Source: Ostrea edulis
Lineage: Eukaryota
NCBI RefSeq assembly: GCF_947568905.1
Contig: NC_079170.1
Location: 9,610,172 to 9,674,000, forward strand
Length of the DNA: 63,829 bases
Reading direction: 5' to 3'
Positions 41,101 through 62,504 of this stretch are shown piece by piece. The position numbers and the translations under genes are program-made. The first letter of the stretch is position 1, and each line of letters starts with the position of its first letter. The notes under the pieces were generated by a model that did no database searches, was not told the origin of the DNA, and worked only from the letters and a program-made list of their open reading frames with translations.

Positions 41101-43191
41101 CAAAAACTTACCTTGGCTCCATTCAGAGGATGTAACTCATCACCGTGGAAATTGATATTCATCCCAGCCGCCTTCCCTGCCATCAAAATCGCACGTGACT
41201 GTTGTAGATCGAACACGCCCTTCTCACAAAACACGTCTATGTTATCTACGTGAAGTTGTCCATCTTTCATTAGGCCTGTAATTGTCGGAAGTTGCTTATC
41301 TATTACATCTTCTGTGGCTTTTACAGGTGTCGATCCTCTAAAATGTATTTAAAACACTAAATTATCTGCTGGATGCAACTTGCAAGAACTACTTTTTTTT
41401 CCCCATTTTTGATAATTAAAGCGATTTACAGTTCTTCCTCAATCAAGTTGGCTAGATTCCCCCCTCCCCTCCATCTTCTAGTCTAGTTTCTAACCCTCTG
41501 CAATTGAAAATAGTTATCTTTTTTATTTATTTGCTACTTTTTTTGGCTTTCATTTTCAATCATGGTTAGATTTTGCTTAAATGAAAATGTGTCTCCCTCA
41601 TGTAAAATAATTCTGGTACGCCCTTCATTGATATTCACAGAAAATTTGTGAATCAAGATATTTAGAAAAAATCGCACTATTTTCTTACGAAAATTAACTT
41701 CAATTCGATAAGATTAATTAATTTTTTAATTAGAAGCTACGGACAGCAAATTTTGATCGAACTGATTGACTGATGTTTATTTGTTCACGACATGAAGATA
41801 AATATTTTTTGCATACCATATGATGCTGACATGTTGCAGAAGGTTTGAAAACTGAACTAGATCACATAGAATAAATTAAGCCAGTTTGATTCAAGTAGAA
41901 CCTTACTGTTCCAAACATTGCAATAATTTTCGTGTAACAGAAGTTCACATTTGAAATTTTTGCTAACTTTGGAATGGCGTGTGCGCCACAAAATGTTGAC
42001 GATATCGTAAGCGGATGTTCCCGTTTTGCAGTTTCAATGACCTTCAGCATTTTCACTTCGGATTCTGTGTCGAGTCCGTATCCACTCTTACACTCTATGC
42101 ACGTGGTTCCCGTGGACATCATGTCGTACAAACGTTTGTTGAGACTGACATACAATTCATCTTGAGAAGCTTTTCGTGTATGTTCTACAGTGAAGTGAAT
42201 ACCACCACCGGCTTCATGGACTTCCATATAGGACGCACCAGCTAACTACAAACAAATCGATGTTTTATTTACCGTATTCCGGGAACAACAGAGGAATCGG
42301 TGAATATATATCACATTATTAACAAAACCAGAGACATATTTAGAAGACTTTGAAAACAATCTTAGAATGTGAGAATACCCTGGTAAATATATTCAGGACT
42401 AAGGTCCTATTGCAAACCTGGTGAGATGTTTTCTTTGGACAAATAGGTTACATTCTGCATTCCGACAATTGTTTGGAAAATGACCTATCATTTTATTTGA
42501 ACAAATTAGGCGTCTAAATAGAACCTTCATAGCAAACTCGTGAACGCGGTCCCCGGCCCATACTGGGTGTGTGTGGGCGTCAACAAGTCCGGGAACAATG
42601 CATTTCCCATCGGCCTCGATCACTCGGTCTACGTCATCGTCACTACTAGGATACCGAGCTACTCGCTCCGAGTCCAAGCCAACAAATTCTATTTTACCAT
42701 AGCTACAAAGAAAATAATAACGAAAAATCGTAAATGTGCAACAAAAAAGTGTTCTTTGTTTTTTGGAGTAAATTAAGAAAGTTCATTCTATTTTTAAGAA
42801 CAGAAATTCTGAATTAAAAGCAAGGAAGTGCTTGATGGTAGATGGAAACAAATGTACCCCAGGTACTTACGGGAGTTTTACACACAGCTTTACTCGTCTG
42901 TTCTGTATTGTATATACAGTAACTGCCCTGTTAGATCTGCCCTATATCTGCGTTCACCACGATAACGTTGTTTATTTGCTCTATTTCCCGATAGGCCTGC
43001 AAACGTGTCTTACCTGTACAGGTAACCTATAATTCTCACCTGTCCACCAAAATACAAGTTCCATCTCCGTCTTCCGCTTCTATGATATCCACATGTTGCA
43101 TTTCCTTCCCTCGAAGAACCCGTATGTCGCTGTCATTGCGGATGGTGACAATCTGCTTGGCTCCTTTTACCAGCAGTTTATAAGCCCCCAT
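38113..43191 (-). CDS. AMDHD1: Probable imidazolonepropionase (amidohydrolase domain-containing protein 1), about 438 aa
   Basis: Phase-consistent exons: 43191-43040 ([15 protein letters not shown]), 42702-42525 ([27 protein letters not shown]), 42245-41968 ([10 protein letters not shown]...ECKSGYGL...FCGAHAIP), 41337-41112 ([11 protein letters not shown]...FHGDELHP), 39434-39216 (ISHLEE...[10 protein letters not shown]...[10 protein letters not shown]), 38609-38449, 38215-38113 (WEHLIYQFG...EWCG*). Sum is 1317 nt, in frame. Probable 5'UTR exon ends at caag|gtgagt, about 43900. Confidence 0.95.
39585..40620 (-). mobile_element. tRNA-derived SINE whose 5' half is expanded into a 49-bp minisatellite (about 20 copies, 39626-40595)
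   Basis: Unit acgacagtccagtgccctaccgatctaactaaagagttaacccactaac; flanks complete a SINE head (cctactagctctggctagggg...tagttagatcggtagagcactggactgtcatgccaaaggtcccgagttcagtc on minus). Confidence 0.8.
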
Positions 43192-44129
43192 GTTTTGACT
43201 TTAATTCTTGCAATATAGAGATATTGTTATCGTCGCGTGTCTAATAACATCATTTGTTTATCTCTACGCGCGAAATATGAATTCATCGATTTTTTACAAA
43301 TACATGATCAGTTAACAGTAACAGAATTTTCAAATAAAAAAAAACTCGCCCTAAATCCTTGAGATGAATGTCATGTGGAAAAATAAAATTAGATTTTGTT
43401 ATCAAACGTTTTTCATAATACATATGTAGATTATATAACCCCATTTTGATAAAGTGTAAAATTTTAAAACTTGGATAGAGATATTGGATAGTATTATGTG
43501 GCAGTTACTCATGTGTGCCGATTATGATTCAAAAACCTCAAACTTCGAGCAAAAAAACCCGCCATTTCAGGTGTAACAAAACCACACGTGACTTTTGATA
43601 GAGAATCCTGTTTAGCGATCTGCCCGACATCTGCATGCTACATCTTCTATAGCAAAGTTCGTGTACAATCGTTTTCTAATTTATATAGCCATGTGTACAT
43701 TATTAATAATTTTATTTAATGTTTCTAGCCACATTTTGCATCAAAGTCGGAGACTCTGGTACCTTGAAAAGTGCGGAGTGTTTGAAAAACCGGAGCACTT
43801 TTATAAGCCGTTTTTAACAGTCGGAGGTTGCGTGATGGTTAACATATAATGTCCTGACCTAACACGTCCATATATATGAAGAATTTCAAGTTTACTCACC
43901 TTGTTCGTCTTTTCTTTGCTACGGGGCCGCCACCTGATGTCGCTGGACCGCCATCTCGAATGTAGCGTTCTACCCGGTGTATCTTAGGGACTTAAATTTA
44001 TAATATTTAACGATCCAGCTATCCCACTACTAGCTGTGTCTGAAGTGATCACCACATTGTTTTATGTGTTTGTTTCACGTCCTTTCCAGAATTTTTCACT
44101 AATATTGACACTTCGTCAGCTGTAGATTA

Positions 44130-44535
44130 ATTAACTGTACCAAAGTTAGACCTAAGCAGGCAGCTCAGGGCCCCGTAGCATTGAGGGTTCCTTCTCATGC
44201 CAACGCCTGTCGTGATTCAGAAACTCAGTTATTAAGGTATCGTTGGGGAAAACCCGCTACTTCCTAGGTTTGATGCGTCCATTGTAAGAGGGGGTTCGAA
44301 CCCACGACCTCCATTTTAGCGAATGGCGCGCTCCAACCACTGAACCACCACAACCGGTTTTATGAGCGCCGAATAACTGAGCAGACGCCGAATAACTGAG
44401 CAGACTCCGAATAACTGAGCAGAGCAGACGCCGAATAACTGAGCAGACGCCGAATAACTGAGCAGAACAGACGCCGAATAACTGAGCAGACGCCGAATAA
44501 CTGAGCAGAGCAGACGCCGAATAACTGGGCAGAAG
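44130..44535 (-). mobile_element. tRNA-headed SINE with adjacent 19/24-bp tandem repeat (gccgaataactgagcagac)
   Basis: Minus strand tggtggttcagtggttggagcgcgcc...ggtcgtgggttcgaaccc head and Deu-like body; about 8 tandem units at 44368-44535. Confidence 0.65.
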
Positions 44536-44828
44536 AATATATCTACATTTTCGTCGTAAAAATAATTGATTATTGATGTTTATTGTGATTTTTTTCAATA
44601 CGTTTACTACGTCAACTTTCTCATTCAAATCAAGGAAATTAATTTTTAAAAATAGCGTAATGTTTGATTATAAAGGTAAACCATTGTGTCCTTTATCAAT
44701 ACTTGCTATTGTGAACTATTTATCTCCATCGAGATAAACCCTCACCCATTGTTTTTGTTATCAAGATGAAAGCGGACTCGATCAATTAAGACTGAAATTC
44801 ATTTTGAGAAATATTTGTATATTGTATT

Positions 44829-47800
44829 ATGGCTATGCTACTGAGGCTAAGTTTGTGTGTTTTTCTGATTTTGGTGGGAGAGGACTTGCTGGTATGTATG
44901 TATAATCATGTCCGATGTAAATTAAGTTATTTCATTAATTACTTTTTTTAATGCAAAGGTGATGCATTGCTTTGAAATAATACAAGTAGTTCAAGATTAA
45001 ATCATTTTTAAATTCAGAAACATCGCATTGGTGTGTAACATATTATTGGGTCTGAATTGTGTGTTCATTTTCGCGAAAGTCCAATTTCATATTCTTAGAA
45101 TGAATAATATTGATATACTATGTGCCATAGGATTAATTGCACGTGTAGAATAGTGTATGTTTAAAACTTTCTCCATAAAAGTCTGTGTTTATATGAGGTA
45201 TTCAGTAACTTTCTGGTGAAAAATACAATTATATCTGAAAATATGAATAAGTGACCATATATTTGTATACAGAATTAGGAACGAATTATCATTGATTCAA
45301 CGTGCATGTCAAAGTAGATAAAATGTTAAATTGAATTTTGATATGGTAATCTATCTCAGGATGATTATAGATGTAAAACAGCAAGAACAGGAGTACCAGA
45401 AGGGACACGCCCATCACAACCTTATGTAGGATGTTTGTCTTAAGACCTTTACTTAGGGTAGTATGAGCCATCATCCAGCGATACACCTGTGCTTTCTTTT
45501 ACATCGTGTGAATAAAAGGTCCTAGCTTAAGTACTGTCACAGAATAGACAAACCAGAACTTCTGAGTTTGAAATATTTCCCCAAAATTGACCTAGTTTAA
45601 AAAACTGTTGGTCTTTTCCCGAACATCAAAGAAAATGAGAAAATTGTTCGGAATGAAAATCTTTGCTATTCGCACATTTTCATGTAGTTTACAAAGGTCT
45701 TATCTTGAAAAATGTGAGAGGAGTTAAATAGACAAATCATGCACTTTATGGTATTTTCTTAGAACTGATTAAGTTCAATAACCTGTAATTTTCTAGGAAA
45801 TTAGAGAAAATAAAAGGCCTTGCCACGTGCACATCTTCAATACCCATAAAATACTTTGTAAAATAGAATACCCTCTCGTAAAATCTGGGGAAGGAGTTAG
45901 ACGGACAAATAATGTACCCTCTGTGTAATATTTCTTCAAAACTGATTAAGTTCATCAACCTGTAATTTTACACACACAAAAATTGAAGACAATCAAAATA
46001 TTGTAACTTGCACATCTTCAATACCCATACGAACACTCTGTAAAATAAAGTACTCACTTGAAAACTGTAGGAGGAGTTAGACAGACAAATCAAGTACACT
46101 CCATATAACATTAAATAAAAAAAAATCACACAACTCATCACACATTATCATCACCCTTGTAGAATTATGTTTTAACACTATTTGTATTTGTACTTAAAAT
46201 GAAGAATCGTGTATATGTTTATACCATAACTACAAGACGACTGTGTTTCATTGTTACATGTATATGTATTATAGGAGACAGATTTACACAAGTTTTCGCA
46301 CTTGTTTCCGAATCTTATTACACTTGTATGTTTCGTGTGAATTGTTCAATTAATAAATACAGTTTAAACCAAATTTCAAATAAAGTGGCAAAACTCCTGT
46401 AAGGAAAGTAGAAATGAATCAAAATTGCAGCATGATCTGGAGTTACTCCCAGAGAAGCTACACAGCAAGTTTGAGCTTGACATGAGACAGAGAAATGAAA
46501 ATAGACACAGAAAACCCCGAACGGACGTACGGACATTTGTAAGAAATGATAATAGACACAGAAAACCCCGAACGGACGTACGGACATTTGTAAGAAATGA
46601 TAATAGCCACAGAAAACCCCGAACGGACGTACGGACATTTGTAAGAAATGATAATAGACACAGAAAACCCCGAACGGACGTACGGACATTTGTAAGAAAT
46701 GATAATAGACACAGAAAACCCCGAACGGACGTACGGACATCTGTACCGTGATACGTCCTAGCTAAAGACTGGCGTGTAAAAACTGCTGGTCTCTGCCGCA
46801 AATAATTATGATACGTCCCACCTAAAGACTGGCGTGTAAAAACTGCTGGTCTATCCTGCAAATAAGTATGATACGTCCCACCTAAAGACGGGCGTGTAAA
46901 ACTGCTGGTTTCTGTTACAAATAAGTGTAATACGTCCCACCTAAAGACTGGCGTGTAAACACTGCTGGTCTCCGCCGCGGATAGGTGTATTTTATGTCTG
47001 AGTAGAACCGGTCGGTGTATTTTCTTCCTCTTGGAATAACTACGTACAGATAGTATGTTATATCATCATCTAAGTTTAGAACACAGACTGTGATAGAGTC
47101 TTTTTACCAATGTCTAATCTGCTTTGTTTGTTTGCCAAAAGACAACAATAATTCAAAATGTGTTGTTGAAGAGCAAAATTCCAATAATTTTCATGAAGTA
47201 CGCTTTTTTGCTGACGGCTAATATGTACTTTGTTTGGTTACCATATACATGTACAGCTGTCTATAAAAAGATATTCTATCAAATTATTGTGGCAAGAAAT
47301 TAAGGCACTGCAATGTCAATTCTTACAACTGTTTTTTGAAGTGATGGTTTCGGGGGACCAGTATAGGATCTCATCAGTAGCAAACTATGATATTTGTTCC
47401 AAATAATTTCAAGTTTATGTGGCAAGGTTATCAAGTAAATTACAAACATGAATAACAAGAGATATGAAATATTTAAAATACTTATATTTTTCATAAAATG
47501 TACATTTTATTTAAACTTTTCCAGGTTTTAAATTTTTTGATTAATTGGTCCCATAAATGTTATGTTTATACCTCCTTAATACAGGTCGTCAGTATGAAGT
47601 CTGCTCGTGCCAAACCTAAGCTGTAAGGTGACCGCCCAGTATTCCGACGGTCCGATAGTCCGACGGTTCGGTAGTCCGACGGTCCGATAGTCCGACACTC
47701 CGATAGTCAGACGGTACGGTGGTCCGACGGTCCGAAACTCCGATAATTTGTGGCCACATATATAAGAGAGTGCTATGTAATAGGCAGCAGAAAACAGGAT

Positions 47801-49769
47801 TAAGTGCCGTGTGCCAGAGCGATTTTTTAACGTCACAAGAGCAAAACATCGCACAGTGGGGAAACTTTGAACGGGTTCGACCTACATCGGGTACCTGTAA
47901 AGTGCGAAACGAAACGAAACGAAATCTACCGAAACGTAACCCACCGAAACGAGACGAAACCCACCGAAACGAAACGAAACAGATTGTATAACCGAACTCT
48001 ATTTATTATAATAATTAAAAATGGTGTTTAACCGAACTCTATTAATTATAATAATTAAAAATGGTATCTTAAGCCCCTGTTAAAGTTACCACATATAAAT
48101 AAAATTTGCCTCCCCATTGTGGTAAGCTTTCGGCTTGACAGATACAAAGTTTTAAAAGTTGGAAGAGGGTGAGTAAGCACAAAGTTCATATCCGAAGTTG
48201 ATTGAATACCCTGTGCAATTAGTTTCGGATCCATAAATTTCAGAACAGAGGGTTACAGTTCGGCATAAATACACGTTTCAGTATTTTTTGCTCTAAAGTC
48301 AAATCTATGTATACATATGGATATTGTGTATTTGTATGTAGTATATCAAACGGTGGATTCTGAGTGTGTCTTCCCGTTCTCTTTGCAATTTCTGCTTCCC
48401 TTGTTCATAAGCCTTTTGAGTTTACAAAATGCTGACCTCCTCCTGATATTATTGCATAAAAAATTCTGTTTTCCGTCCCGTTTTCAATTTCCCGTCCTAG
48501 CAACAAAACAAATGTATAGAGTTATATTTAGACTCACTACATATCAATAATAATTTTTAATAACACACATATATATATTTTACCGAATTGCATTCATATA
48601 ATATGGTATACTATCTAACTTTTTCCATTATTGAAAGTACTCGCACCTCAGCAGTTAGAGATAAAGCTCTTCCTGCTTTCAAATTTCTCTCCGTTCTGAA
48701 ATTTATTGATCTGAAACTAATTGCACATGTTATTTAATCAACTTCGGATATGTACATTTTGCTTACTCACCACCCCCCCCCCCCCTTTCCAGCTTTTAAA
48801 ACTGTGTATCAGTCAAGCTGAAAGCCTATATCAAAGGGGAAGCGAATTTTATTTATATGTGGTAATTTTCACAGGGGCCTAAGATACCATTTCTAATAAA
48901 AGAGTTCGGTTATACAATCTGTTTCATTTCATTTCGGTGGGTTTTCGTTTCGGTAGATTTCGTTTCGTTTCGCACTTTACAGGTACCCACCTACATCTAC
49001 ATGTATATATTTCGGCATCGTCGGAAGCCCACGGTTGATTACGCTTCGTTCCTTTCTCCATCACCCGTGGGTTCATTCATTCCTACTCGCTGTGTGTCTG
49101 TCTGTATGTATGTATGCTGAACTTAAGGAACATTTTCATCGTGTCTTTATAGAGAGCTATGTAGATACATGTAGGTATACATATATACAGATATCTATAA
49201 GGCTTGTAGGGAGGGCTGACAGCGGATACTCGTCAGGGACGTAGCAACAGAGGGGGGGGGGCTGATCCCTTCCTCACTTTTTAAAAAATGTTCCTTTCTT
49301 CTTTTTTACATGTTAAAACTCTTTTTGGTTCGGCTGCCCCCCCCCCCTCCCACTAATCCTTTCTGGCTAGCCCCCAGCTTCCCCCTTTCAAAAACGAGGC
49401 CACGCGCCTGCTCGTGTCCCCTTATCACTTTCAAAAGTAGGGAGTGGAGACAAGAGTATGTATGTCCTTACACTTCTTGGACCCCAAACGAGATCCTCAT
49501 CTTTATATCAAATGTTGTTTGATAACATCCTCCCCTAAATTCTAGTGCAAGAAATTTCTGTTCAAAAATTGTTATTTGCTATAAAGAAAGATATACCATA
49601 AAATAGGTATAAAATTCGGATATACAGATTTCCGTTGAAAAACTTAGATAGGCTCTGATTGGCGCATAATTACATTATTGTCGTTCCATACAAAAATTGA
49701 TTTCCTTATTGATTGTGTTATGCCCTGTTATACAGAAAATTTTCATTTAATAAACTTTTGCCCGTGGAT

Positions 49770-49801
<32 letters not shown>

Positions 49802-52800
49802 TGAGGCCTACTTCAAACTTTTAAGCCTGAGCAGGGTGTAGGGATTCCTACCATTTTTAGCTTGTTATTTCAGGGGTTGGGGGTGATTATGTAGGTTACC
49901 GTCGCCATCTTCATGACGTTTATGTGGAAAATTTTGGAATTGAGTCCCATTTTAGCATGTGTCCCAATCTAAGTTTTGTGCTCTCCTACCAACACTTTAC
50001 GGTATTTGACTACGGCATTGTCGTTGCCTTATAGCTAATAACAAATTCGTCCGAACAAATTGCTAATTCGTCCGAACAAATAGCTAATTCGTCCGAACAA
50101 ATGACTAATTTGTCCGAACGAATGTCCATTTCTTCCGAACAAATCCATAATTCGTCCGAACGAATTACTAATTTGTCCGAACAAATAGCTAATTCGTCCG
50201 AACAAATGGCTAATTTGTCCGAACGAATGTCCATTTCGTCCGAACAAATCCATAATTCGTCCGAACGAATTACTAATTTGTCCGAACGAATTACTAATAT
50301 GTCCGATCAAATAGCTAATTCGTCCGAACAAACTGTTAATTTGTCCGAACGATTTTCTATTTCGTCCGAAGAAATCGGTAATTCGTCCGAACGAATTACT
50401 AATTTGTCCGAACGAATTACTAATATGTCCGAACAAATAGCTAATTCGTCGGAACAAATTGCTAATTTGTCCGAACAAATAGCTAATTCGTCCGAACAAA
50501 TTGCTAATTTGTCCGAACGATTTTCTATTTCGTGCGAACAAATAGCTAATTCGTCCGAACGAATAATATATTTCTATATGGCCTTTCTACGCCGCCGTAA
50601 GTTCACACTTGAATGATTTTGGTCAGAAATTGATTGTCTGATTTATAATCAGGCCGTGTCGATTTTGGCGGTTTCTGGTAATTTCCTTAAAATAATGCCT
50701 GACATGAATACATTTTAACTCTATTAATTAACATTTTTGGTGATGGTCAACATGTCGGACTATCGGACCGTCGGAATATTGAACCGTCGGACTACCGGCC
50801 CGTCGGACTATCGGACCGTCGGAATACTGGGCTTGAACCCAGATGTAAACATAGGTAGTGATTGCTCCTTCTCCAAACCCTCGGCATGCACAAGTGAGAA
50901 TCACGGGTCTTTCAGACATGACATTAACAATTGAAGTCCCGTGTCGCAGCAGGCATTGGCACGTTAAAGAACCCTCACTGCTACAGCCCTGAGCGGAATC
51001 TGATTAAAACCAGATCCTGAGATCCACTCACTTTGATCGCTACACTAGGATCTGACGTAACCCCATATAGGGTCACGTTCGCATGACCGTTCGTTAAGCC
51101 AATCAAATTGACCCTGTCGATTTATACCAACGATAATTTTTCTCCCATGAACTTTGCGTCATTATTTACGTTAGAGATGCAATAAAAATGGCCGCGCATT
51201 TGACAGACGACTGCACACAAAACATGCGATTTAAACAACGTCTGTATTCTCTGCGGGTTTTCTTTCATTCAAACGCTAAAAAATCCCGATGGAGTTCACA
51301 ATTCAAGGAAAATGGCTGCGTTTGTTTGGTTTGAAAGAAAACATATCACAGCTAGATGCGACGTCACAATGCACCGTTTACGTCGACTGGCGTTATATTC
51401 CTCGCGTTATTTAAGTAAACCATTTTGAAAACTATTCAAATCGTACCCATCCCTATTCATACATAAATCGGAATTCACAATTAATTTAATTTGGGTATAT
51501 TTCATATCGTACGTTTTGTTGTTTGTATGAACGGAATAGATGAGGCATTATTGCGAAAGTTTAAAATTCGTTATGCGAGAATGTACAATTTTACAGTGTG
51601 GAATAAACTGGGAGAGAGATTACAGCAATTTGTTTACGAATTGCCAGGAACCGCCTAAATAGCCATCATTGTCTGTATGGCGCAATCTGACTGGCTGATA
51701 GTTCTCATGAATATTCCAAGCGAAAGGTCATGAGGACATGATCCCCTATGGGGTTATGTCAGATCCTATTGTAGCGATTGTGAGCGTATTCTAGGATCTG
51801 ATTTTAATCAGATTGCCCTGAGCGCTAAGCATGGGTCTAAATTTGTGGTACTTCACCTACAGCTGGTGACGTCTCAATATAAGTGAAAAATTCTCGACGG
51901 GACGTAAACAACAAACAATCAATCAATTCTTAATACAAAGAACTTTAACAGTTATAGCAGAATTGATATAATCTCGTATGGTTTTTCAATGTTCTTCGTA
52001 GTGTTTTCCCATCTGTTGTTGTTTGTTTGTTTTCTTGTTTTATTTCATTATAGGTGAATGGCAACGTTGTGGTGACCCTAAATCTACTGAGTTATTCAAA
52101 TAATGTAAATAAGTATGAAGTAAAAGAAGGGAAAACTAAAATACAGTATTGCTGCGGGACAGACACAATTGTGAAGGATCCTAGCCAGAGATGTTTAAAT
52201 TCTTGTAATCCGTCAATAGAAGTCAATTTGCGGTGAGTATTATATCTATTTGACATGAAATTCACTTGTAACTGTATCATGCTATTACCATACTTGTTTT
52301 ATGATATTGCTTTTCTCACACCTGCATTTGGTGTTTATATCTCTCAACTGATTCGATACGCAAGAGCTTGTTCTGCATATGATCAGTTTTTATATCGAGG
52401 CAGACTACTGACAAATAAATTTATGTTACAGGAATTTCAACAGTTTCGTTTAAAGTCAGCATTTAGCAAGTTCTATGGTCATTATAATGATATAATTTAC
52501 CAAATGATACAATCTATCGTTGGGTAATATTTCGACTACAGATTACTCCGTTTACCTGATAAAGATATAGGGCGCACGGCGGGCGTAATCGGTCGACAGG
52601 GGATGTTTACTACTTCTAAGACACCTGATCCCAACTCTGGTATGTTCAGGGGTCCGCATTTGCCCAACTCTTTTTTTTTTGTATTCCTTGTGGGAGTTAC
52701 GACACTGATAACTGTTTATCTTCGCCTTTCTTACTGTCTGACGTGCGACATGTACCAATTGTTAGGACTTTATTTACACACTGAATTTGATTACGGATTA

Positions 52801-55800
52801 CTCCATTTACATAATCTAGATATGGGGATCACAGTGGATGGGACTGGTCAACAGGGAATGCTTACTCCACCTTAGCACCTCATTCCATTTCTGGTATGTC
52901 TAGGGGTCCGTGTTTGCCCAACACTTAATTTTGTATACTTTATAGCTTGATTGATATTGTTTAACATCCCACTCTAGAATTTTTCATTCATATGCAGACG
53001 TCACCATTTCCAGTGAAGGGCTGCAAAATTTAAGCCTATGATCGGCGCGTACGGCGTTTGAGCAGAGAGGGGTCTTTATCTTGACACACTTGCTCCGATA
53101 CGAGGCCTCGGTTTTTACAGTCTCATCCGAAGGACTGCTCCATTTAGTCGATTTTTACGACAAGCAAGGGGTAATGAGGGCCTAATCTAATCGGGAGATC
53201 TTCACCTTTTCATTTTAAAGACCATGGGTCTTTCGGATATTACTTAAAATAGAGGTTCTGTGTCACGGTAATCTTTGGCACGATGAAATTCTGCATTGCT
53301 GCGGCCATGAGCGTCAGGCAATATATTGTATATGTCACAATTTGTGGCACCTACTCTACATAAGTGGAAATACATAGAATGACACGTAAAATAACAAAAA
53401 ACTTAATCTTTGAGAAAATATTTAATGGAAAGGTGAAGAAAACGGACAGTGATCCATTGACCCCTGAACTTACCAGATGTGTGATCAGGTTCCAAGCAGG
53501 AGTAAGCATCCCTTGTCGACCAGTCGCACCCACTGTGAGCCCTATATCTCAGTAGGGTAAACGGAGTAATTCGTGGTCAAAATCAATGTGCAAAGAACGA
53601 CCTCAATCGGTATGAAACATGTCAGACAACACTTTACGTGATGACAGATTGTATTGGTGAATCAGATCGTTATAACGACCATAAAATTGTACGAATTGCT
53701 GACTTTAAACGGGACTGAAAGGATGAAAAGAATTGTCTGCTACATTGACAACTCGATAAATACTATCGTTTGTTGATACATATTTTGTTTTTGTCTTCGT
53801 ATTAATGACAGATCTGGGAAAGGTGGACCTATCATCAGTTCATTGGAGAGTAGATCTCTTGGAAAGACTACGAATCTCGACTTTCAGAACGTCACAGTTA
53901 TTGGCACACTCCAGAACCCGATAAAAATAGATATCCAAAACTGGACGGTAAAATGACTTGTGATACTTTGAGATAATGTTATGACCAGATACCGGTATTC
54001 GCAAAATTGATTTCAATTCAGAATTCAAAGGTCAGTTGTGGTACATCGCTTATATTCATCAAATATGATTACAGACAGAAATGGTTTATTTTTATTCCAG
54101 AACAATAGTTTTGTTGAATTTTTGATCTATGACGGTGACAACAGAAATCATACTCTGGCTCAGGAATTTTTCCAAATTGTGCATGCCAATGTCTTAAATT
54201 CAAATGCGACGCTGCTTTACAATACTCTGACCAGGTAAAAATGAAGACTTGTTATTCTGTCATCTGTTTTCTAACATCTATTCCTCTTAGTTGCTGAGTA
54301 AAGTTTAAAAAGTTAACGTTAACGAAATTATCTTTACAATATGTAAATTCAATTTATCTATTCGCCTGATACGATTTAACTAATGTGATACAATGAAATG
54401 TACGATTTTTCAGGGTAAACATGATTATAACAGTTGAGTGTGATCCACAATTCTATGGCTCGGATTGTTCTCATCGATGTTTATTTCACGTAAACAGTAG
54501 TCACGGAAGATGTAATATGTCGGGTAAAATGGTGTGTGAAGACCATTATTTCGGGCCTAAATGCAATATATTCTGCACTGACAAAAACAATGGAACGTGT
54601 AATGATTATGGAAAACTCATCTGCAATACTCACTTTTTTGGCAATGAGTGTTCCAGGTATTGTGTCGATACAGATCATGGGAATTGTTCTACAGCTGGGT
54701 TTCTACACTGTCAGAATGGTAAGTTAAACAGAAATACTTATCTGTATATGTCAATACATTTCCGGGATGTAAACTTAATTTTTGAAAACCAAAGCACTCC
54801 CAAACCACCAATTTCACATGAGACAAGGTATTGCATAAAGTACAATGCATACATTCTATATCTGATTTACCATTATGAGATTATTTGTACTTAAAACTTC
54901 TAGGATATACTGGACAGAATTGTGAGAGCAAAATTCCCGAATGCATGAAAGCACCTTGTGAAAACGGAGGCACGTGCATAGATTTGACGGACGGGAATTA
55001 TAACTGTAGTTGTCCCCCTGGATGGACTGGAAGAAAGTGTGAAAATGACATTGACGAATGTTCTATGCATATTTGTCAAAACAACAGCACGTGCACAAAT
55101 CTCAACGGAACATTTCAGTGCGCGTGTTTAGCAGGTTGGTATGGTGAGAAGTGTAATGCGGACATTGATGAATGTTCAGTCAACCTTCCTTGTCAAAATG
55201 GAGGATCGTGCTACAACATAAAAGGCGGCTATAAATGTATATGTCTTACTAACTGGAAAGGTGAAAACTGCACCGATGATGTTAATGAATGTCTTCAGAA
55301 TGCATGCCATAGTCACGGAAATTGTTCAAATAGCCCTGGAACTTATTCATGCTCCTGCTATCCAGGCTGGAACGGAACTGGTTGCGATGCAGATGTTAAC
55401 GAATGTTCTGTGTACAATCCCTGCTCTAATGGAGGGTCTTGCCAAAATAATCCAGGATCTTACAGTTGTTCCTGTTCTTCAAACTGGGAAGGCGTAAACT
55501 GCGAACAAGACGTGAATGAATGTTTGCATACGAAGATATGCAATGATCGTGGTAATTGTACAAACTCTGCTGGAAGCTTCCAATGCACTTGTAATGCCGG
55601 ATATCAAGGTGATCAGTGTCAAGAAGACATTAATGAATGTCATCAGAATGAAGCATGTCTTAATGGCGGTACTTGTACAAATACGTTTGGTTCTTACGTA
55701 TGCATTTGTCCCCCAAATTGGACAGGATTGAAATGTGGTGAAGACTTTGATGAATGTTCTCAAAATATTTGCAACAACAATGGAAACTGCACTAATCTTG

Positions 55801-58765
55801 ATGGAAGTTTTCGATGCGACTGTTTTTCAGGTTGGAAAGGTGTGGAATGTGAAAATAATGTAAATGAATGTAAAAATCATGTTTGTCGTAATGGAGGGAC
55901 ATGCGTTGATAATCCGGGTAGTTATAAGTGTGTTTGCCCGCCATATTGGACAGGAACTGCTTGTGAACAAGACGTAAATGAATGCCAAACTGGCGTTTGT
56001 ACTCATGCTTCTCAATGTAGCAACAGCCCGGGATCGTTCAATTGCACATGCCAGAAAGGATGGGTGGGTAGGGCATGCGATAATGACTTGAACGAATGTT
56101 CCTTTCCAAATTTTTGTTCGCCGCAGAACAGTTTAAGCTGCATCAATACAGATGGCAGTTATTCGTGTCACTGTAGACCAGGATGGGGAAACGCAGACTG
56201 CACAGACGATGTAAATGAATGCGAACTAAACATGCTGAATTGTGAAAATGGTGGGACTTGTATGAATACTCGTGGCAGTGCCCATTGCAGCTGTCCCTCT
56301 AGTTGGACAGGCAAACATTGCGAGGAAGATGTGAATGAATGCAATAACGGTGTTTGTCTCCAAGCATCGACTTGTCATAATTTTGCTGGCGGATATAATT
56401 GCACCTGCATTAAGGGTTGGAGAGGACGAAATTGTGAGATTGACATTAATGAATGTCAGGAGAACTTGTGTAAAAACGCAAAATCTTGTCTAAATTCCGA
56501 GGGATCATTTCATTGTGTATGTTTGTACGGGTGGAGTGGTTTAAAATGTGACCAAGATATAAATGAATGTGAACATGAGAAGTGCTCCGGATTCGGAATG
56601 TGTGTCAATACTGAAGGATCCTACATGTGTAACTGTCAGGAAGGACATTCAGGAAGATCTTGTGAAATAATGCAAGGAAAATCCACCGTTGGTATGTACA
56701 GTATAGCTCCTGTTGACTTTATTATTTTAATTTCCATTCCCATGTTAAAGGAGTAAATTAGTATATATATTCATATTACAGGGTTAAACGGAGCAGAAAA
56801 GATCCTACTTGAATTTGATGGACATCTCACAGAAACGAATGTCAACAAGATAGTAAATTCATTGAATGTGTTGGTTTCTTCAATATGCCATGACGTCAAC
56901 ATAATTTTAAACGACCATGTCTTATCATACAGGTATTTTGTAATGGTTTTTAATTTTTAAATATCAAATATCTTATCAAATATTTTTCCCACATTGACTG
57001 AGTGCTAAAATGATATGTGCACTTTATTTGTAAGTGTAAATATATAATTTTTTGTAGATTTTTGTTTGTCCCATTCAGGAATTCTTCATGCATATGAAGA
57101 CGTCATCAGTTGTAGGTGAATTGCCATTAATTTTGACATATATACGACCTTCAAGGTCTTAGCATTTGAGTTTTTCCATGCTTATCTTGACACGGGACCC
57201 TTTATTTTGAAGTCCATATTTGAAGGACTTGTGACGTCTGCTTTCAATGCCGTGTGCTTGAAACAGGAAAAGTCACCACTATCGTAACACGCCTTAAGCT
57301 TGATGCGGTGCCGGACTCTAAAAATGAAATCTAGTGCTCTTGAATTGCCAAACGAGCCACACCCCCCGCCCTTCCTAAACGCAAAGGTACCGCGAGCGGT
57401 GCTATTTGTAGAAGACAATGAGATATATGTTACATGAACTTCATTGAAAAATGAGGATATTGTTAATGTTAATCTGTTATTCTCTAATCAAATATACCAC
57501 ACTGGGCTTTCAGCAATGGGAAAACAGACTTTCAAGTTCCAGTAATATGTGATGGAAAACCACTGAAGCGCGAGCGTTTCGAGATAAAGCTAAAAGAAAT
57601 GTCCACTGAGCAGCTGAAAGCAGCTTTCCCGTTTGAACTCTCTCGACTAAAGACAGACAGTGGAGGAAAGAATGGGGTTTGTTATTTATAGCAATCAACT
57701 AACTGTCAACATTAATTCTAATCAAATAACTGTCAACATTAATTCTAATCGTTTGTTGATCAAAGAAATGGAATCAAAATAGAATTCATTACCCATGATA
57801 CGAGTAATTCATAATTTTTTATCTAATCAATGAAATAATTCTTTGTAAGCAACTTCAGTTTTGATTCTTTTACGCAATTCATAGTGAGAAATATCGACAT
57901 CGAGTTTTGAAGTGTCAAGTTAATATTTTTTATCGGTTATTATGTTTTCCAAGTAGAATTGAAAAGGTCTAATTCAGAGAAATCATGAATAGACTAACTT
58001 GTGTTATGTTCGTATCTAATTTTAGCATTGGATATCGCAGAATATTCCTCTGTTGGCTGGCGTTGGGGGTGGTGTACTTCTTGTGGTCATCATTATCATT
58101 GTCGCGGTCAAACTCAAGTGAGTACAACTCTTTGCATGTTGACTTATAACTTCAAAAGTGCCATTACAATGAAGTATAAAGTGCTTTGATCCTTAACCTT
58201 ATAATACAGAATGCTAAGACAATCATATTGCTATTACACGAACTTTGTGCAACAGGTATTGGTCTACAACAAAACAATTTCTGTGATTAATTATCTAGAC
58301 ATTTCCATCGTTAAATGCCATTCTCTTAATCTGCAACCAATTAACGCCCAAATCACATTACGATTCATTTTATTTTAAAAAGAAAAACATCTGGTAAATA
58401 TGAAAAATGTAGCATATAGCGAAGATGAAAATGGGATAGCATATAAGTCGAAGAATTGATATCCAAATGATATCCAAATTACACCATCTGGTATATCATC
58501 TAGATCTTGGCGAAAGCTATCCGTCAGGAAAATAACAACTTCTATTGTTAATGATAACAATACATCTGTCACATAGTTGGTTTTTTTTTTTTTTTTGGTA
58601 TTTCATTAAAGAAGGCGTAATGGGCGCCACAATAAAGACTCTAATATGGATGGAAACGATTATTTGACGATGGATGACAGTTCTAACCAGCATTCTGCAG
58701 TGACAAAGGAAAATCCCATATACTTCTTAACTAACATGGATGAAGACGATGATACGCACGTATAG
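44829..58765 (+). CDS. Atypical Delta/Serrate-like (Notch-ligand-like, fibropellin-like) EGF-repeat type I membrane protein, about 1054 aa
   Basis: Phase-consistent exons: 44829-44891 (signal MAMLLRLSLCVFLILVGEDLL), 52054-52232, 53812-53947, 54101-54234 (MNNL/C2-like: LNLLSYSN...CCG...CLNSCNP...NPIKIDIQNW...FLIYD), 54414-54718 (DSL-like modules), 54904-56691 (15 EGF repeats), 56782-56932, 57514-57676, 58026-58117 (TM: IPLLAGVGGGVLLVVIIIIVAV), 58612-58765 (KRR...ENPIY...THV*). Sum is 3165 nt, in frame. Linking the first exon across a 7.1-kb intron is inferred from phase and the missing signal peptide. Confidence 0.8.
46490..46740. repeat. 51-bp tandem repeat (atagacacagaaaaccccgaacggacgtacggacatttgtaagaaatgata), 5 copies
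   Basis: Read directly; explains the repetitive ORFs 46318-46861. Confidence 0.9.
46749..46972. repeat. 59-60-bp tandem repeat, 4 copies, each with a hairpin-forming atacgtcc...ggcgtgt
   Basis: Read directly, immediately after the 51-bp array. Confidence 0.85.
47889..48988. mobile_element. Mutator-like non-autonomous element (1100 bp) with (cgaaa)n subterminal repeats
   Basis: gggtacctgtaaagtgcgaaacgaaacgaaa ... tttcgtttcgtttcgcactttacaggtaccc; perfect 9-bp duplication acctacatc at 47880-47888 and 48989-48997. Confidence 0.85.
50011..50599. mobile_element. MITE-like element filled with a 21-bp tandem repeat (aattcgtccgaacaaatagct, about 24 copies)
   Basis: tacggc...gccgta ends; internal array 50043-50560. 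Confidence 0.7.
50996..51815. mobile_element. Mutator-like non-autonomous element (820 bp) inserted into a Deu-type SINE
   Basis: Long imperfect TIRs (aatctgattaaaaccagatcct...); perfect 9-bp duplication ccctgagcg at 50987-50995 and 51816-51824; SINE sequence resumes after the insert. Confidence 0.85.
52315..52935 (+). mobile_element. Penelope-like element fragment (RT C-terminal region plus terminal repeats)
   Basis: PAFGVYISQLIRYARACSAYDQFLYRGRLLTNK..QQFRLKSAFSKFYG resembles the recalled Penelope RT thumb; related ggtcgacaggggatg(c/t)ttact..cacctgatcc repeats at 52565-52680, 52815-52935, and inverted at about 53440-53720 and 60935-61290. Confidence 0.65.
52948..53195 (-). mobile_element. 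SINE-like repeat copy (family of 24238-24501)
   Basis: Colinear similarity: gacgtcacca...gaagggctgcaaaattt...cctcggttttt...ctcatccgaagga...cgacaagcaagggg. Confidence 0.7.
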
Positions 58766-61856: not shown

Positions 61857-62504
61857 TTACATTCTGCATAGAAATTGGGCGACTACTCCATCTATGCTGT
61901 CTCCTGTCATGAATTCTACCCAGTGACCGATGTACGTTTCTTTGTCAATTTGTCCTCCTTTCTTTGTGTCCATGGCTTTGAACATGGCCTCTACCGCCTC
62001 TGAGTTACTCATCCCGAAACATTTCATGCCCTTTTGAAAATTTTCAAAAGTTATATATCCAGCGTTGTTCACATCAAAAGCATCGAAGAAGCTCCCAACC
62101 ATGGATTCAAATGTTTCTACGAACAACTTTTTATTGAAACCGACAAGTTCCTTGAAAGCTGCGACATATTCATTTTCAGATATGTTCCCGCTGTTTCCCA
62201 TCTTTTCCCCGACTTCTAACAATTTTGGTGCTGTTTCCTTTGATATTCCACCCTTGCCACCTTTCGCTGTAATTTCTTCACCTTTCTGAATCAAAATTTC
62301 CCATCCATTCTCCAACCAATTTCGAATTGCTTGCGCTTTTTTCTCGTCCAAATTAAACTCTTTGATGAAAGAATCGGTCATATCTGAATAATCCTGTTTG
62401 CTAATGTATCCGTTCCGCTTCAGATTACTTAGTTGAAACCATTTTCTGACTTTACTCTCCACAAGTTGAGAGACAACCATTGTTTCAATATTACCGGAAG
62501 TCAT
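61857..62504 (-). CDS. Sarcoplasmic calcium-binding protein (SCP/calexcitin)-like EF-hand protein, intronless, 215 aa
   Basis: Single 648-nt ORF; KVRKWF..xNGYISKQDY, FFDAFDVNNAGYITFENF, MFKAMDTKKGGQIDKETY and terminal W.EFMTG match the SCP family pattern. Confidence 0.85.
   Translation of the reverse strand: MTSGNIETMVVSQLVESKVRKWFQLSNLKRNGYISKQDYSDMTDSFIKEFNLDEKKAQAIRNWLENGWEILIQKGEEITAKGGKGGISKETAPKLLEVGEKMGNSGNISENEYVAAFKELVGFNKKLFVETFESMVGSFFDAFDVNNAGYITFENFQKGMKCFGMSNSEAVEAMFKAMDTKKGGQIDKETYIGHWVEFMTGDSIDGVVAQFLCRM

What the first reader, a model, noticed from the sequence alone, without database searches (positions are those of the whole stretch)
52054..54930. Notch-ligand-like protein with three chained DSL-like modules
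Seen: after an MNNL/C2-like region the protein reads VECDPQFYGSDCSHRCLFHVNSSHGRCNMSGKM / VCEDHYFGPKCNIFCTDKNNGTCNDYGKL / ICNTHFFGNECSRYCVDTDHGNCSTAGFL / HCQNGYTGQNCE. The C-x3-(F/Y)(F/Y)G-x2-C-x3-C-xn-C-x3-G-x3 unit occurs three times, with the last cysteine pair of one unit serving as the first of the next. Established: canonical Delta/Jagged have a single DSL whose FCRPRDD-type loop contacts Notch. Here those loops are replaced. Inference: a lineage-specific ligand paralog with altered or lost Notch binding, possibly a decoy, adhesion or immune-recognition molecule.
Basis: partly seen in the sequence, partly recalled or inferred. Interest (0 to 1): 0.7.

Follow-up and report, generated by a model that had tools for sequence, protein, structure and literature searches.

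The report
Oyster Delta-like protein with three DSL modules
This is an intact bivalve gene for a membrane protein built like a Notch ligand but with three chained receptor-binding (DSL) modules whose usual Notch-contact residues are gone; such tandem-DSL genes were already reported in bivalves and sea anemones, so it is a new family member, not a new kind.

Summary
One exon (54414-54718) encodes three overlapping DSL modules. Pfam DSL scores 44.9 bits for the exon, and 32.9, 32.2 and 22.6 bits for the units alone (the third is cut by the intron). The motif occurs nowhere else in the six frames of the window.

I built a nine-exon, all GT-AG, stop-free model of 1033 aa. It includes an exon (53812-53947) that is needed to keep the frame. 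The parts are a divergent MNNL/C2 domain, 3 DSL, 15 EGF (14 calcium-binding type), an unnamed juxtamembrane domain, a TM helix, and a 53-aa tail with YLTM, NPIY and C-terminal THV.

Exons, and 90 of the 91 cysteines compared in the EGF exon, are conserved in related contigs (dN/dS 0.18). The closest named relatives are two mislabelled scallop proteins.

None of the three units keeps the JAG1 R201/R203/D205/F207 Notch-binding face. Their C3-C4 loops are shorter and carry conserved N-glycosylation sequons, so canonical Notch binding is doubtful. This was not tested.

Tandem-DSL genes are already described (Gazave 2009; Liu 2021), so this is a new member of a known kind. No RNA data were available, so splicing is inferred. 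Other scan notes call the genome flat oyster; I did not check that.

The parts
44829..44891 (+). Candidate first coding exon (signal peptide, 21 aa, MAMLLRLSLCVFLILVGEDLL, donor gtatgt, phase 0). Unverified.
   Evidence: Only ATG-started hydrophobic ORF with a phase-0 GT donor found in 43000-52053 by my scan. A at -3 and G at +4. No transcript or comparative support.
52054..52232 (+). Exon A: start of the MNNL/C2-like domain (..LNLLSYSNN..YCCG..C..C..)
   Evidence: Pyrimidine tract then ag|GTG, and GCG|gtgagt donor. Aligns to profile positions 10-60 of the iterated C2/MNNL profile and to the N-terminus of scallop P0285 just after its signal peptide.
53812..53947 (+). Exon A2 (136 nt): middle of the C2-like domain, with the NPI..W motif (..LQNPIKIDIQNWT)
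   Evidence: Found here. ag|ATC acceptor and ACG|gtaaaa donor; length = 1 mod 3, exactly what is needed to join exon A (ends in phase 2) to exon B (starts in phase 0). Matches the NPI/W columns of the profile and of P0285.
54101..54234 (+). Exon B: last strands of the C2-like domain (..FVEFLIYDGDN..)
   Evidence: Canonical splice sites. Conserved as an exon in related contigs L003-L007 (tblastn 39.5% identity).
54414..54718 (+). Exon C: three overlapping DSL modules. Unit 1 is 54439-54564, unit 2 is 54535-54651, and unit 3 is 54622-54718, completed by 54904-54923 of exon D.
   Evidence: Pfam DSL 44.9 bits; units 32.9, 32.2 and 22.6 bits. AF2 pLDDT 91.8. Model residues 40-83 superpose on the JAG1 DSL 186-233 at 1.4 A over 44 residues. 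All 13 Cys kept in L001, L002 and L003; dN/dS 0.18 against L001.
54904..56691 (+). Exon D: end of DSL unit 3 (GYTGQNC), then 15 EGF repeats (14 with the D-x-[DN]-E calcium-binding prefix, 9 with the C2-x4-[ST]-C3 O-fucose consensus)
   Evidence: Pfam EGF_CA 323.8 bits, 15 stretches. Regex count. Ungapped similarity to L003 over window 54901-56697 only; 65% aa identity over the compared codons 54906-56690, no stops, 90 of 91 Cys kept. Donor TTG|gtatgt.
56782..56932 (+). Exon E: first half of an unnamed juxtamembrane domain (..ILLEFDGHLTETN..)
   Evidence: GT-AG and phases fit. Aligns to the juxtamembrane region of scallop P0006 (tblastn E 0.034 in the window). No Pfam match.
57514..57676 (+). 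Exon F: second half of the juxtamembrane domain (..DFQVPVICDGKPL..FPFEL..)
   Evidence: Acceptor ctttcag|C fits phase 2 of exon E. The weak donor GGG|gtttgt is the only choice that puts the next exon in its TM frame. Resembles P0006 by eye. No Pfam match.
58026..58117 (+). Exon G: transmembrane helix (IPLLAGVGGGVLLVVIIIIVAV)
   Evidence: tblastn to the P0006 TM region is weak (E 2.1).
58612..58765 (+). Exon H: cytoplasmic tail (53 aa from the end of the TM helix) with YLTM, NPIY, an acidic run and C-terminal THV, then the stop codon
   Evidence: NPxY is also present in scallop P0006 (INPLYM).

Best explanation
The locus is one intact gene on the + strand of a bivalve genome. Other scan notes call it flat oyster; I did not check that.

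It encodes a type I membrane protein of about 1,050 aa from the DSL (Delta/Serrate/LAG-2) ligand superfamily. The parts, in order, are:
- a probable signal peptide;
- a divergent MNNL/C2-like domain that has lost one cysteine pair;
- three DSL modules chained so that each C5-C6 hairpin doubles as the C1-C2 hairpin of the next unit (a 29-32-residue period, predicted to form one rigid rod);
- 15 EGF repeats, 14 of them of the calcium-binding type;
- an unnamed juxtamembrane domain of about 105 aa;
- a TM helix;
- a 53-aa tail with YxxPhi, NPxY and a C-terminal T-x-V.

It belongs to the tandem-DSL expansion already noted in bivalves and cnidarians. Its nearest named relatives are two scallop proteins annotated as 'eyes shut-like' and 'Notch protein-like'.

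Inferred, not shown: none of the three units keeps the conserved Notch-binding face of canonical DSL domains, and the replaced loops are short, conserved and carry N-glycosylation sequons. I therefore think it does not activate Notch in the canonical Delta/Jagged way. More likely it is a cell-surface binding protein, either a non-canonical or cis modulator of Notch or an adhesion/recognition molecule, that is internalised through its NPxY and YxxPhi motifs.
For: Gene model:
- Nine exons, all GT-AG, phases consistent, 3102 nt with no internal stop.

DSL modules:
- Pfam scores as above; the motif is unique to this exon in the window.
- AF2 gives pLDDT 91.8 with three periodic hairpin pairs.
- Unit 2 superposes on the JAG1 and JAG2 DSL at 1.4 A rmsd over 43-44 residues with 34-35% identity.
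- A profile of the chain hits the Notch ligands in the PDB at E 1e-10 to 4e-8.

C2/MNNL domain:
- My spliced N-terminus scores 33.9 bits (E 3e-9 in a set of 2001) against a profile of canonical plus tandem-DSL N-termini. The best of 2000 shuffles scores 8.9 bits. The alignment is collinear across all three exons.
- Members of that profile carry Pfam MNNL above its cut-off (P0094 62.5 bits, P0010 40.5 bits).
- The N-terminus aligns at 27% identity with scallop P0285, starting right after that protein's signal peptide.
- The AF2 model of P0285 residues 17-240 (pLDDT 85.6) has Notch-ligand C2-DSL structures as its top 24 PDB hits, at E 6e-11 to 1e-7.

Selection:
- Similarity to related contigs is confined to the exons.
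- dN/dS is 0.18 for exon C against L001. Synonymous sites are saturated against L002 and L003, while dN is 0.24-0.27 for exons C and D (0.48 for exon B).
- 90 of 91 Cys of exon D are kept in L003.

Lost binding face:
- The human JAG1 residues F199, R201, R203, D205 and F207 form the Notch-binding face (PMC3415683).
- Here only the aromatic before C3 survives, in units 2 and 3 (F and Y). The loops read LFHVNSSHGR, TDKNNGT and VDTDHGN.

Family context; Gazave 2009; Liu 2021.
Against: - No transcript evidence; no RNA run holds the sequence.
- The signal-peptide exon is only a candidate.
- The exon F donor (gtttgt) is weak.
- Pfam's own MNNL model found nothing on the three separate exon pieces. 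A profile built only from the N-termini of the hits that carry Pfam MNNL (nearly all vertebrate) gave no hit. The C2 assignment therefore rests on an iterated profile and on a 27%-identical relative.
- The spliced protein could not be given to Pfam or AlphaFold, because it has no reference.
- As a single sequence, exon C's best PDB matches are SCARF1 (E 3e-4) and Tie2, ahead of JAG1 (E 0.04).
- Loss of Notch binding is argued only from missing residues. Very divergent DSL ligands (for example in nematodes) still signal; that point is my own knowledge.
- The phylogenetic position is unresolved (long branch of 2.71).
Confidence: 0.7

Rival explanations
1. It is a working, canonical trans-activating Notch ligand. 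One or more of the three DSL units, together with the C2 domain, still bind Notch EGF11-12 through a remodelled interface, and the extra units only lengthen the stalk.
For: The overall C2-DSL-EGF-TM layout is that of Delta/Jagged. The C-terminal T-x-V resembles the PDZ ligands of DLL1, DLL4 and JAG1 mentioned in PMC3415683. The aromatic equivalent of JAG1 F199 is kept in units 2 and 3. There is strong purifying selection.
Against: The equivalents of R201, R203, D205 and F207 are missing in all three units. The loops are 2 to 5 residues shorter and carry sequons. There are no trimmed DOS-type EGF1-2 after the DSL chain; the first EGF has ordinary loop lengths. Canonical mollusc Delta-like proteins with intact loops exist separately (P0153, P0168).
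Confidence: 0.2
2. It is not a DSL-family protein by descent. It would be a MEGF/SCARF/Draper-type scavenger or engulfment receptor whose EGF-like array happens to score as DSL.
For: Best single-sequence and best structural PDB match is human SCARF1 (E 3e-4; Z 5.9-6.0; TM 0.60). There is an NPxY motif in the tail, as in CED-1/Draper/MEGF10 (the comparison is my own knowledge), and scallop P0006 conserves it. A Nematostella tandem-DSL protein is auto-named 'protein draper'.
Against: Each unit has 4 cysteines with DSL spacing (x8, x3, x6-9, x7, x8). It lacks the two extra cysteines (the CxC pairs) that SCARF1 and Tie2 units show in the same alignment. Pfam DSL outscores every EGF model in each unit. 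The N-terminus is C2/MNNL-like, and no EMI domain was reported. A working resemblance to such receptors is not excluded; see the novel case.
Confidence: 0.05
3. The exons do not form one functional gene. They would be a decaying pseudogene, or exons of two neighbouring genes that I joined wrongly.
For: No RNA evidence. No full-length same-species protein was found in the 5.8-billion-protein collection. The exon F donor is weak, and the first exon is not established.
Against: Nine exons keep one frame with no stop over 3.1 kb. Exon-restricted conservation, saturated synonymous change and kept cysteines argue for selection. The N- and C-terminal parts each align to the same scallop family.
Confidence: 0.05

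Closest known systems
Canonical Delta/Serrate/Jagged Notch ligands (structures: human JAG1 2VJ2, 4CC0, 5UK5; DLL4 4XLW; mollusc Delta-like P0153 and P0168)
   Same: N-terminal C2/MNNL-type domain, then DSL with consecutive-cysteine spacing, then EGF repeats, a single TM helix and a short tail ending in a T-x-V-type motif. Unit 2 superposes on the JAG1 DSL at 1.4 A.
   Different: Three overlapping DSL units instead of one. The R-x-R-x-D-x-F binding face is absent. C3-C4 loops are 6-9 residues instead of 11. One C2 cysteine pair is lost. There are no trimmed DOS-type EGF1-2. It has 14 calcium-binding EGFs (more Notch- or fibropellin-like), an NPxY tail and an extra juxtamembrane domain.
Scallop proteins XP_021341192.1 'protein eyes shut-like, partial' (P0006) and 'neurogenic locus Notch protein-like' (P0285), Mizuhopecten yessoensis
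   Same: Short-loop chained DSL units (36-40% identity to exon C), followed by GYTG-type entry into the EGFs. P0006 shares the juxtamembrane domain, the TM helix and an NPxY tail. The P0285 N-terminus aligns with my spliced N-terminus.
   Different: They have 5 to 10 or more DSL units and fewer calcium-binding EGFs. P0006 has a long Ser/Thr-rich stalk. P0285 carries two C2-like plus DSL blocks in one model and no TM helix. Identity is low, so they are family members rather than clear orthologues.
Tandem-DSL genes of cnidarians and bivalves described in the literature (Gazave et al. 2009, PMC2770060; Liu et al. 2021, PMC8166818); e.g. Nematostella XP_032232843.2 with 11 DSL
   Same: Head-to-tail overlapping DSL arrays, often behind an MNNL domain. 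Gazave reports one Nematostella gene with MNLL plus 3 DSL. Liu reports that the DSL expansion in lophotrochozoans is mainly due to tandem repeats in bivalves.
   Different: Most of those arrays keep long GHY-type loops and lack EGF repeats. Liu's bivalve tandem-repeat branch is described as lacking EGF. This gene combines a short chain with a long calcium-binding EGF array.
SCARF1 / MEGF10 / Draper-type receptors and Tie2 EGF-like repeats
   Same: Repeated C-x2-G-[WY]-x-G-x2-C-x3-C hairpins forming a rod. Best single-sequence and fold match in the PDB. NPxY in the tail (for Draper, CED-1 and MEGF10 this is my own knowledge).
   Different: Those units have six cysteines (EGF bonding) where these have four. 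They have a different N-terminal domain.
Vertebrate DLL3 (divergent, non-activating Delta-like)
   Same: A family member whose DSL is so divergent that profile tools may miss it (PMC12166595 lists the DSL as absent in mouse and human Delta3). It is a precedent for a ligand-shaped protein that does not trans-activate (my own knowledge).
   Different: DLL3 has one degenerate DSL, few EGFs and no tandem array. There is no direct relationship.

Membership tests
DSL-family Notch ligands (Delta/Serrate/Jagged) | DSL domain: six cysteines with spacing C-x8-C-x3-C-x~11-C-x7-C-x8-C, matched by Pfam PF01414 | tested here: met
   44.9 bits for the exon against a cut-off of 24.2. Units 32.9, 32.2 and 22.6 bits (the last truncated). 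Spacing is x8, x3, x9/6/6, x7, x8. Structural fit to the JAG1 DSL is 1.4 A.
DSL-family Notch ligands (Delta/Serrate/Jagged) | N-terminal MNNL/C2 domain directly before the DSL | tested here: met
   Custom iterated profile: 33.9 bits, E 3e-9, against at most 8.9 bits for 2000 shuffles. The closest annotated relative, P0285, scores Pfam MNNL 20.9 bits (cut-off 22.5) and folds as a Notch-ligand C2-DSL. Caveat: Pfam MNNL gave nothing on the separate exon pieces, and the spliced product could not be submitted.
DSL-family Notch ligands (Delta/Serrate/Jagged) | Conserved Notch-binding face of the DSL (human JAG1 F199, R201, R203, D205, F207) | tested here: not met
   Only the F199-equivalent aromatic is kept, in units 2 and 3. 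There is no R-x-R-x-D-x-F in any unit.
DSL-family Notch ligands (Delta/Serrate/Jagged) | EGF repeats after the DSL, a single TM helix and a short cytoplasmic tail | tested here: met
   15 EGF; TM helix and 53-aa tail in the spliced model. Splicing is inferred, not seen in RNA.
DSL-family Notch ligands (Delta/Serrate/Jagged) | DOS-type trimmed EGF1-EGF2 after the DSL (Jagged, Delta, DLL1) | tested here: inconclusive
   The first EGF after the chain has ordinary loop lengths, and the JAG1-like_EGF2 model's best stretch lies further in. No dedicated DOS profile was run.
DSL-family Notch ligands (Delta/Serrate/Jagged) | Binds and activates Notch | not testable with these tools
   Needs binding or reporter assays.
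Tandem-DSL proteins (bivalve and cnidarian expansion) | Two or more DSL modules in head-to-tail overlap, sharing the C-x8-C hairpin | tested here: met
   Overlapping full-length Pfam matches. The same register is seen in 35 relatives. Relatives have 3 to 14 DSL stretches.
MEGF/SCARF/Draper-type receptors | Six-cysteine (or more) EGF-like units with CxC pairs | tested here: not met
   In the alignment to SCARF1 and Tie2, the two extra cysteines per unit are absent here.
MEGF/SCARF/Draper-type receptors | Cytoplasmic NPxY motif | tested here: met
   NPIY in the tail, and NPLY in scallop P0006. The motif alone is not diagnostic.

The most novel reading that the evidence does not exclude
A Notch-ligand scaffold has been turned into a Notch-independent endocytic or engulfment-type recognition receptor. 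In this reading, the three glycan-bearing, short-loop DSL units and the calcium-binding EGF rod bind some other target (microbial or apoptotic-cell surfaces, or matrix). The NPxY and YxxPhi tail recruits PTB-domain adaptors, as in CED-1/Draper/MEGF10. It would be a convergence between the Delta and Draper designs in bivalves.
Probability: 0.2. Interest if true: 0.6.

Novelty: new member of a known kind. Interest (0 to 1): 0.3.

Why it matters
Bivalves have an unusually large set of DSL-domain genes, and nobody knows what they do. This locus gives a complete gene model for one such member: C2, three DSL modules, a calcium-binding EGF rod, an unnamed juxtamembrane domain and an NPxY tail. It shows that all three DSL units have dropped the residues that canonical ligands use to hold Notch.

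That makes it a good test case for whether the expansion serves Notch signalling at all, or has been recruited for adhesion or immune recognition.

It also shows that public annotations of its scallop relatives ('eyes shut-like', 'Notch protein-like', 'fibropellin-like') are misleading.

Tried and rejected
- tblastn of distant homologues (P0006, P0010, P0153, P0168 and others) against the window found only the DSL exon, plus one weak hint at 53849-53944 that led me to exon A2.
- A C2/MNNL profile built only from the hits that carry Pfam MNNL (nearly all vertebrate) gave no hit. A mixed profile gave a marginal 15.3 bits. Only the iterated profile was convincing.
- Pfam on the single exons A, A2, B, E and F found nothing meaningful.
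- The word-index search with the EGF exon found no same-species full-length protein; best identity was 46%. A second search with scallop P0006 found only one more relative, P0285.
- No RNA runs exist for the stretch, so I did not use read laying; DNA contigs cannot show splicing.
- P0267 could not be located on a contig.
- A maximum-likelihood tree of C2 plus the first DSL (50 rows) left the window's protein on a 2.71 branch with no supported position, so I draw no conclusion from it about origin.
- I rejected the idea that units 2 and 3 are simply the EGF1 and EGF2 of a normal ligand. Those have six cysteines each, and these have the four-cysteine DSL spacing.
- I did not type the spliced protein into Pfam, AlphaFold or the atlas, because it has no reference. 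Those steps are left out.

Full report
**What is there**

The window is AT-rich animal DNA (GC about 0.29-0.40). Notes from other agents of this scan call the genome flat oyster; I did not verify that.

They sit in an ORF at 54421-54894 and continue in a long EGF-rich ORF from 54885. Reading the DNA shows clean splice sites:
- exon C is 54414-54718 (tttttcag|GGT ... ATG|gtaagt);
- exon D starts at 54904 (cttctag|GAT);

**Gene model**

The exon at 52054-52232 ends in phase 2, but the exon at 54101 starts in phase 0, so they cannot be joined directly.

In the intron I found a 136-nt exon (53812-53947, aatgacag|ATC ... ACG|gtaaaa). Its length restores the frame, and it encodes the '...NPIKIDIQNWT' stretch expected in the middle of an MNNL/C2 domain.

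Downstream the model continues as follows:
- exon D ends at 56691 (TTG|gtatgt), where similarity to related contigs also stops (56697);
- exons E (56782-56932) and F (57514-57676) follow;
- a TM exon lies at 58026-58117;
- a tail exon lies at 58612-58765.

The nine exons give 3102 nt and 1033 aa with no internal stop, all with GT-AG introns.

A single candidate signal-peptide exon (44829-44891) passed a simple screen of the 9 kb upstream. It is unverified.

**The three DSL modules**

- Pfam DSL is the best family for exon C: 44.9 bits against a cut-off of 24.2, in three stretches.
- Cut out separately, unit 1 scores 32.9 bits and unit 2 scores 32.2 bits, each over nearly the whole profile. The two matches overlap by the C-x8-C hairpin.
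- Unit 3, truncated by the intron, scores 22.6 bits.
- Canonical mollusc Delta-like DSLs score 53.5 and 43.7 bits in the same run.
- The motif occurs only three times in the six-frame translation of the window.
- AlphaFold2 with 36 aligned relatives gives pLDDT 91.8 and three periodic hairpin pairs.
- Model residues 40-83 superpose on the DSL of human JAG1 (186-233) and of JAG2 at 1.4 A over 43-44 residues, with 34-35% identity.
- A profile of the chain finds Jagged, Delta, Serrate, DLL1 and DLL4 in the PDB at E 1e-10 to 4e-8.

A caveat: as a single sequence and as a fold, the best PDB match is human SCARF1, followed by Tie2. In those alignments SCARF1 and Tie2 have two more cysteines per unit (CxC pairs). 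The units here have the four-cysteine DSL pattern.

This fits the published view that the DSL has consecutive disulfides, that its C1-C2 loop superposes on its C5-C6 loop, and that it may derive from truncated tandem EGFs (PMC3415683).

**The N-terminal domain**

- Pfam finds nothing on the three short exon pieces.
- A profile built only from the hits that carry Pfam MNNL (nearly all vertebrate) gave no hit. A mixed profile gave 15.3 bits.
- I then added 21 tandem-DSL proteins whose N-termini matched at E below 1e-5. With that profile the score is 33.9 bits, E 3e-9, collinear across exons A, A2 and B. The best of 2000 shuffles scores 8.9 bits.
- Members of that set carry Pfam MNNL above threshold (P0094 62.5 bits, P0010 40.5 bits).
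- The profile's two cysteines around 'C..ygk' are both missing here, which suggests coordinated loss of one disulfide.
- The spliced N-terminus also aligns at 27% identity with the N-terminus of scallop P0285, beginning right after that protein's signal peptide.
- P0285 residues 1-240 score Pfam MNNL 20.9 bits against a cut-off of 22.5.
- Its AF2 model (pLDDT 85.6) has Notch-ligand C2-DSL crystal structures as its top 24 PDB hits, followed by generic C2 domains.
- This is indirect evidence for the window's protein, which I could not submit because a spliced sequence has no reference.

**The rest of the protein**

- There are 15 EGF repeats. Fourteen are preceded by D-x-[DN]-E, and nine have the O-fucose consensus.
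- Exons E and F encode about 105 residues with no Pfam match. They align weakly with the juxtamembrane part of scallop P0006.
- The tail has YLTM, NPIY, an acidic run and a C-terminal THV. P0006 also has NPLY.

**Is it a live gene?**

- Contigs from related bivalves or paralogues (L001-L007; 62-77% protein identity in exon C) resemble the window only in exons B, C and D.
- dN/dS is 0.18 for exon C against L001.
- Against L002 and L003, synonymous sites are saturated while dN is 0.24-0.27 for exons C and D (0.48 for exon B).
- All 13 cysteines of exon C are kept, and 90 of 91 cysteines of exon D.
- No RNA run holds the sequence, so splicing and expression remain inferred.

**Relatives and literature**

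The exhaustive search with exon C found 136 proteins. Many have 3 to 14 DSL stretches. They include:
- scallop XP_021341192.1 ('eyes shut-like');
- Pecten 'fibropellin-1-like';
- Nematostella 'protein draper' (11 DSL);
- a jellyfish protein (14 DSL);
- Pleurobrachia predictions.

Two papers already describe such genes:
- Gazave et al. 2009 described Nematostella genes of 1-11 DSL domains, and one with MNLL plus 3 DSL.
- Liu et al. 2021 screened 138 lophotrochozoan DSL genes and attributed the expansion mainly to tandem repeats in bivalves.

The design is therefore known. This gene is a new, well-resolved member with a particular combination of parts.

A tree of C2 plus the first DSL did not resolve its position.

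**Function**

The conserved Notch-binding face of DSL domains is formed by JAG1 F199, R201, R203, D205 and F207 (PMC3415683).

In all three units only the aromatic before C3 is kept, and only in units 2 and 3. The C3-C4 loops are 9, 6 and 6 residues long and contain sequons (NSS, NMS, NGT, NCS) that are conserved in relatives.

I infer that canonical Notch trans-activation is unlikely. I favour a non-canonical binding role with NPxY/YxxPhi-driven internalisation. This step is inference only. The rival that it still signals through Notch keeps about 0.2.

**Verdict**

- It is a new member of a known kind, of moderate to low interest.

Noticed in passing
window 52529-52617 and 53495-53583: The intron between exons A and A2 holds an 89-nt inverted repeat (76% complementary, arms 877 nt apart). 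It is flanked by ORF fragments with '..GMLTP..' peptides on both strands, which looks like a transposon remnant.
   Followed up: partly
window 44379-44533, 46491-46745, 46749-46972, 50044-50564: Four minisatellites (43 nt x3.6, 51 nt x5 at 98% match, 60 nt x3.8, 21 nt x24.8) lie in what would be the first intron of the gene. They create long spurious ORFs on both strands.
   Followed up: partly
window 61857-62504 (- strand): Single-exon ORF of 215 aa with EF-hand domains (Pfam EF-hand_7 46.7 bits). It is a convergent neighbour just downstream of the DSL gene.
   Followed up: partly
window 41862-42677 (- strand): Two ORF pieces of an amidohydrolase-type gene (weak Pfam Amidohydro_3 match, 21.3 bits, at '..DAHTHP..'). 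They bound the upstream side of the DSL gene.
   Followed up: partly
P0007 and P0046 (Pleurobrachia bachei predictions); P0017 (unnamed ENA contig): Ctenophore gene predictions carry arrays of DSL modules (P0007: Pfam DSL 89 bits, 6 stretches) plus a TM helix. P0017 has a weak MNNL-like N-terminus. A 2025 preprint (10.1101/2025.09.30.679519) reports no DSL- or MNNL-bearing ligand in Mnemiopsis, so these may deserve a look as candidate ctenophore Notch partners.
   Followed up: no
P0285 (Mizuhopecten yessoensis 'neurogenic locus Notch protein-like', 1042 aa): The model contains two successive C2-like plus DSL blocks (residues about 17-235 and about 250-620) before the EGFs, and has no TM helix. 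It is either a real internal duplication or two tandem genes fused by the annotation.
   Followed up: partly
model of window 54415-54717 against PDB 8hna / 8hn0: Human SCARF1 residues 84-183 are the best structural and single-sequence match to the DSL chain. This suggests that chained DSL units and SCARF/MEGF-type EGF units are close relatives, differing by one disulfide per unit.
   Followed up: partly
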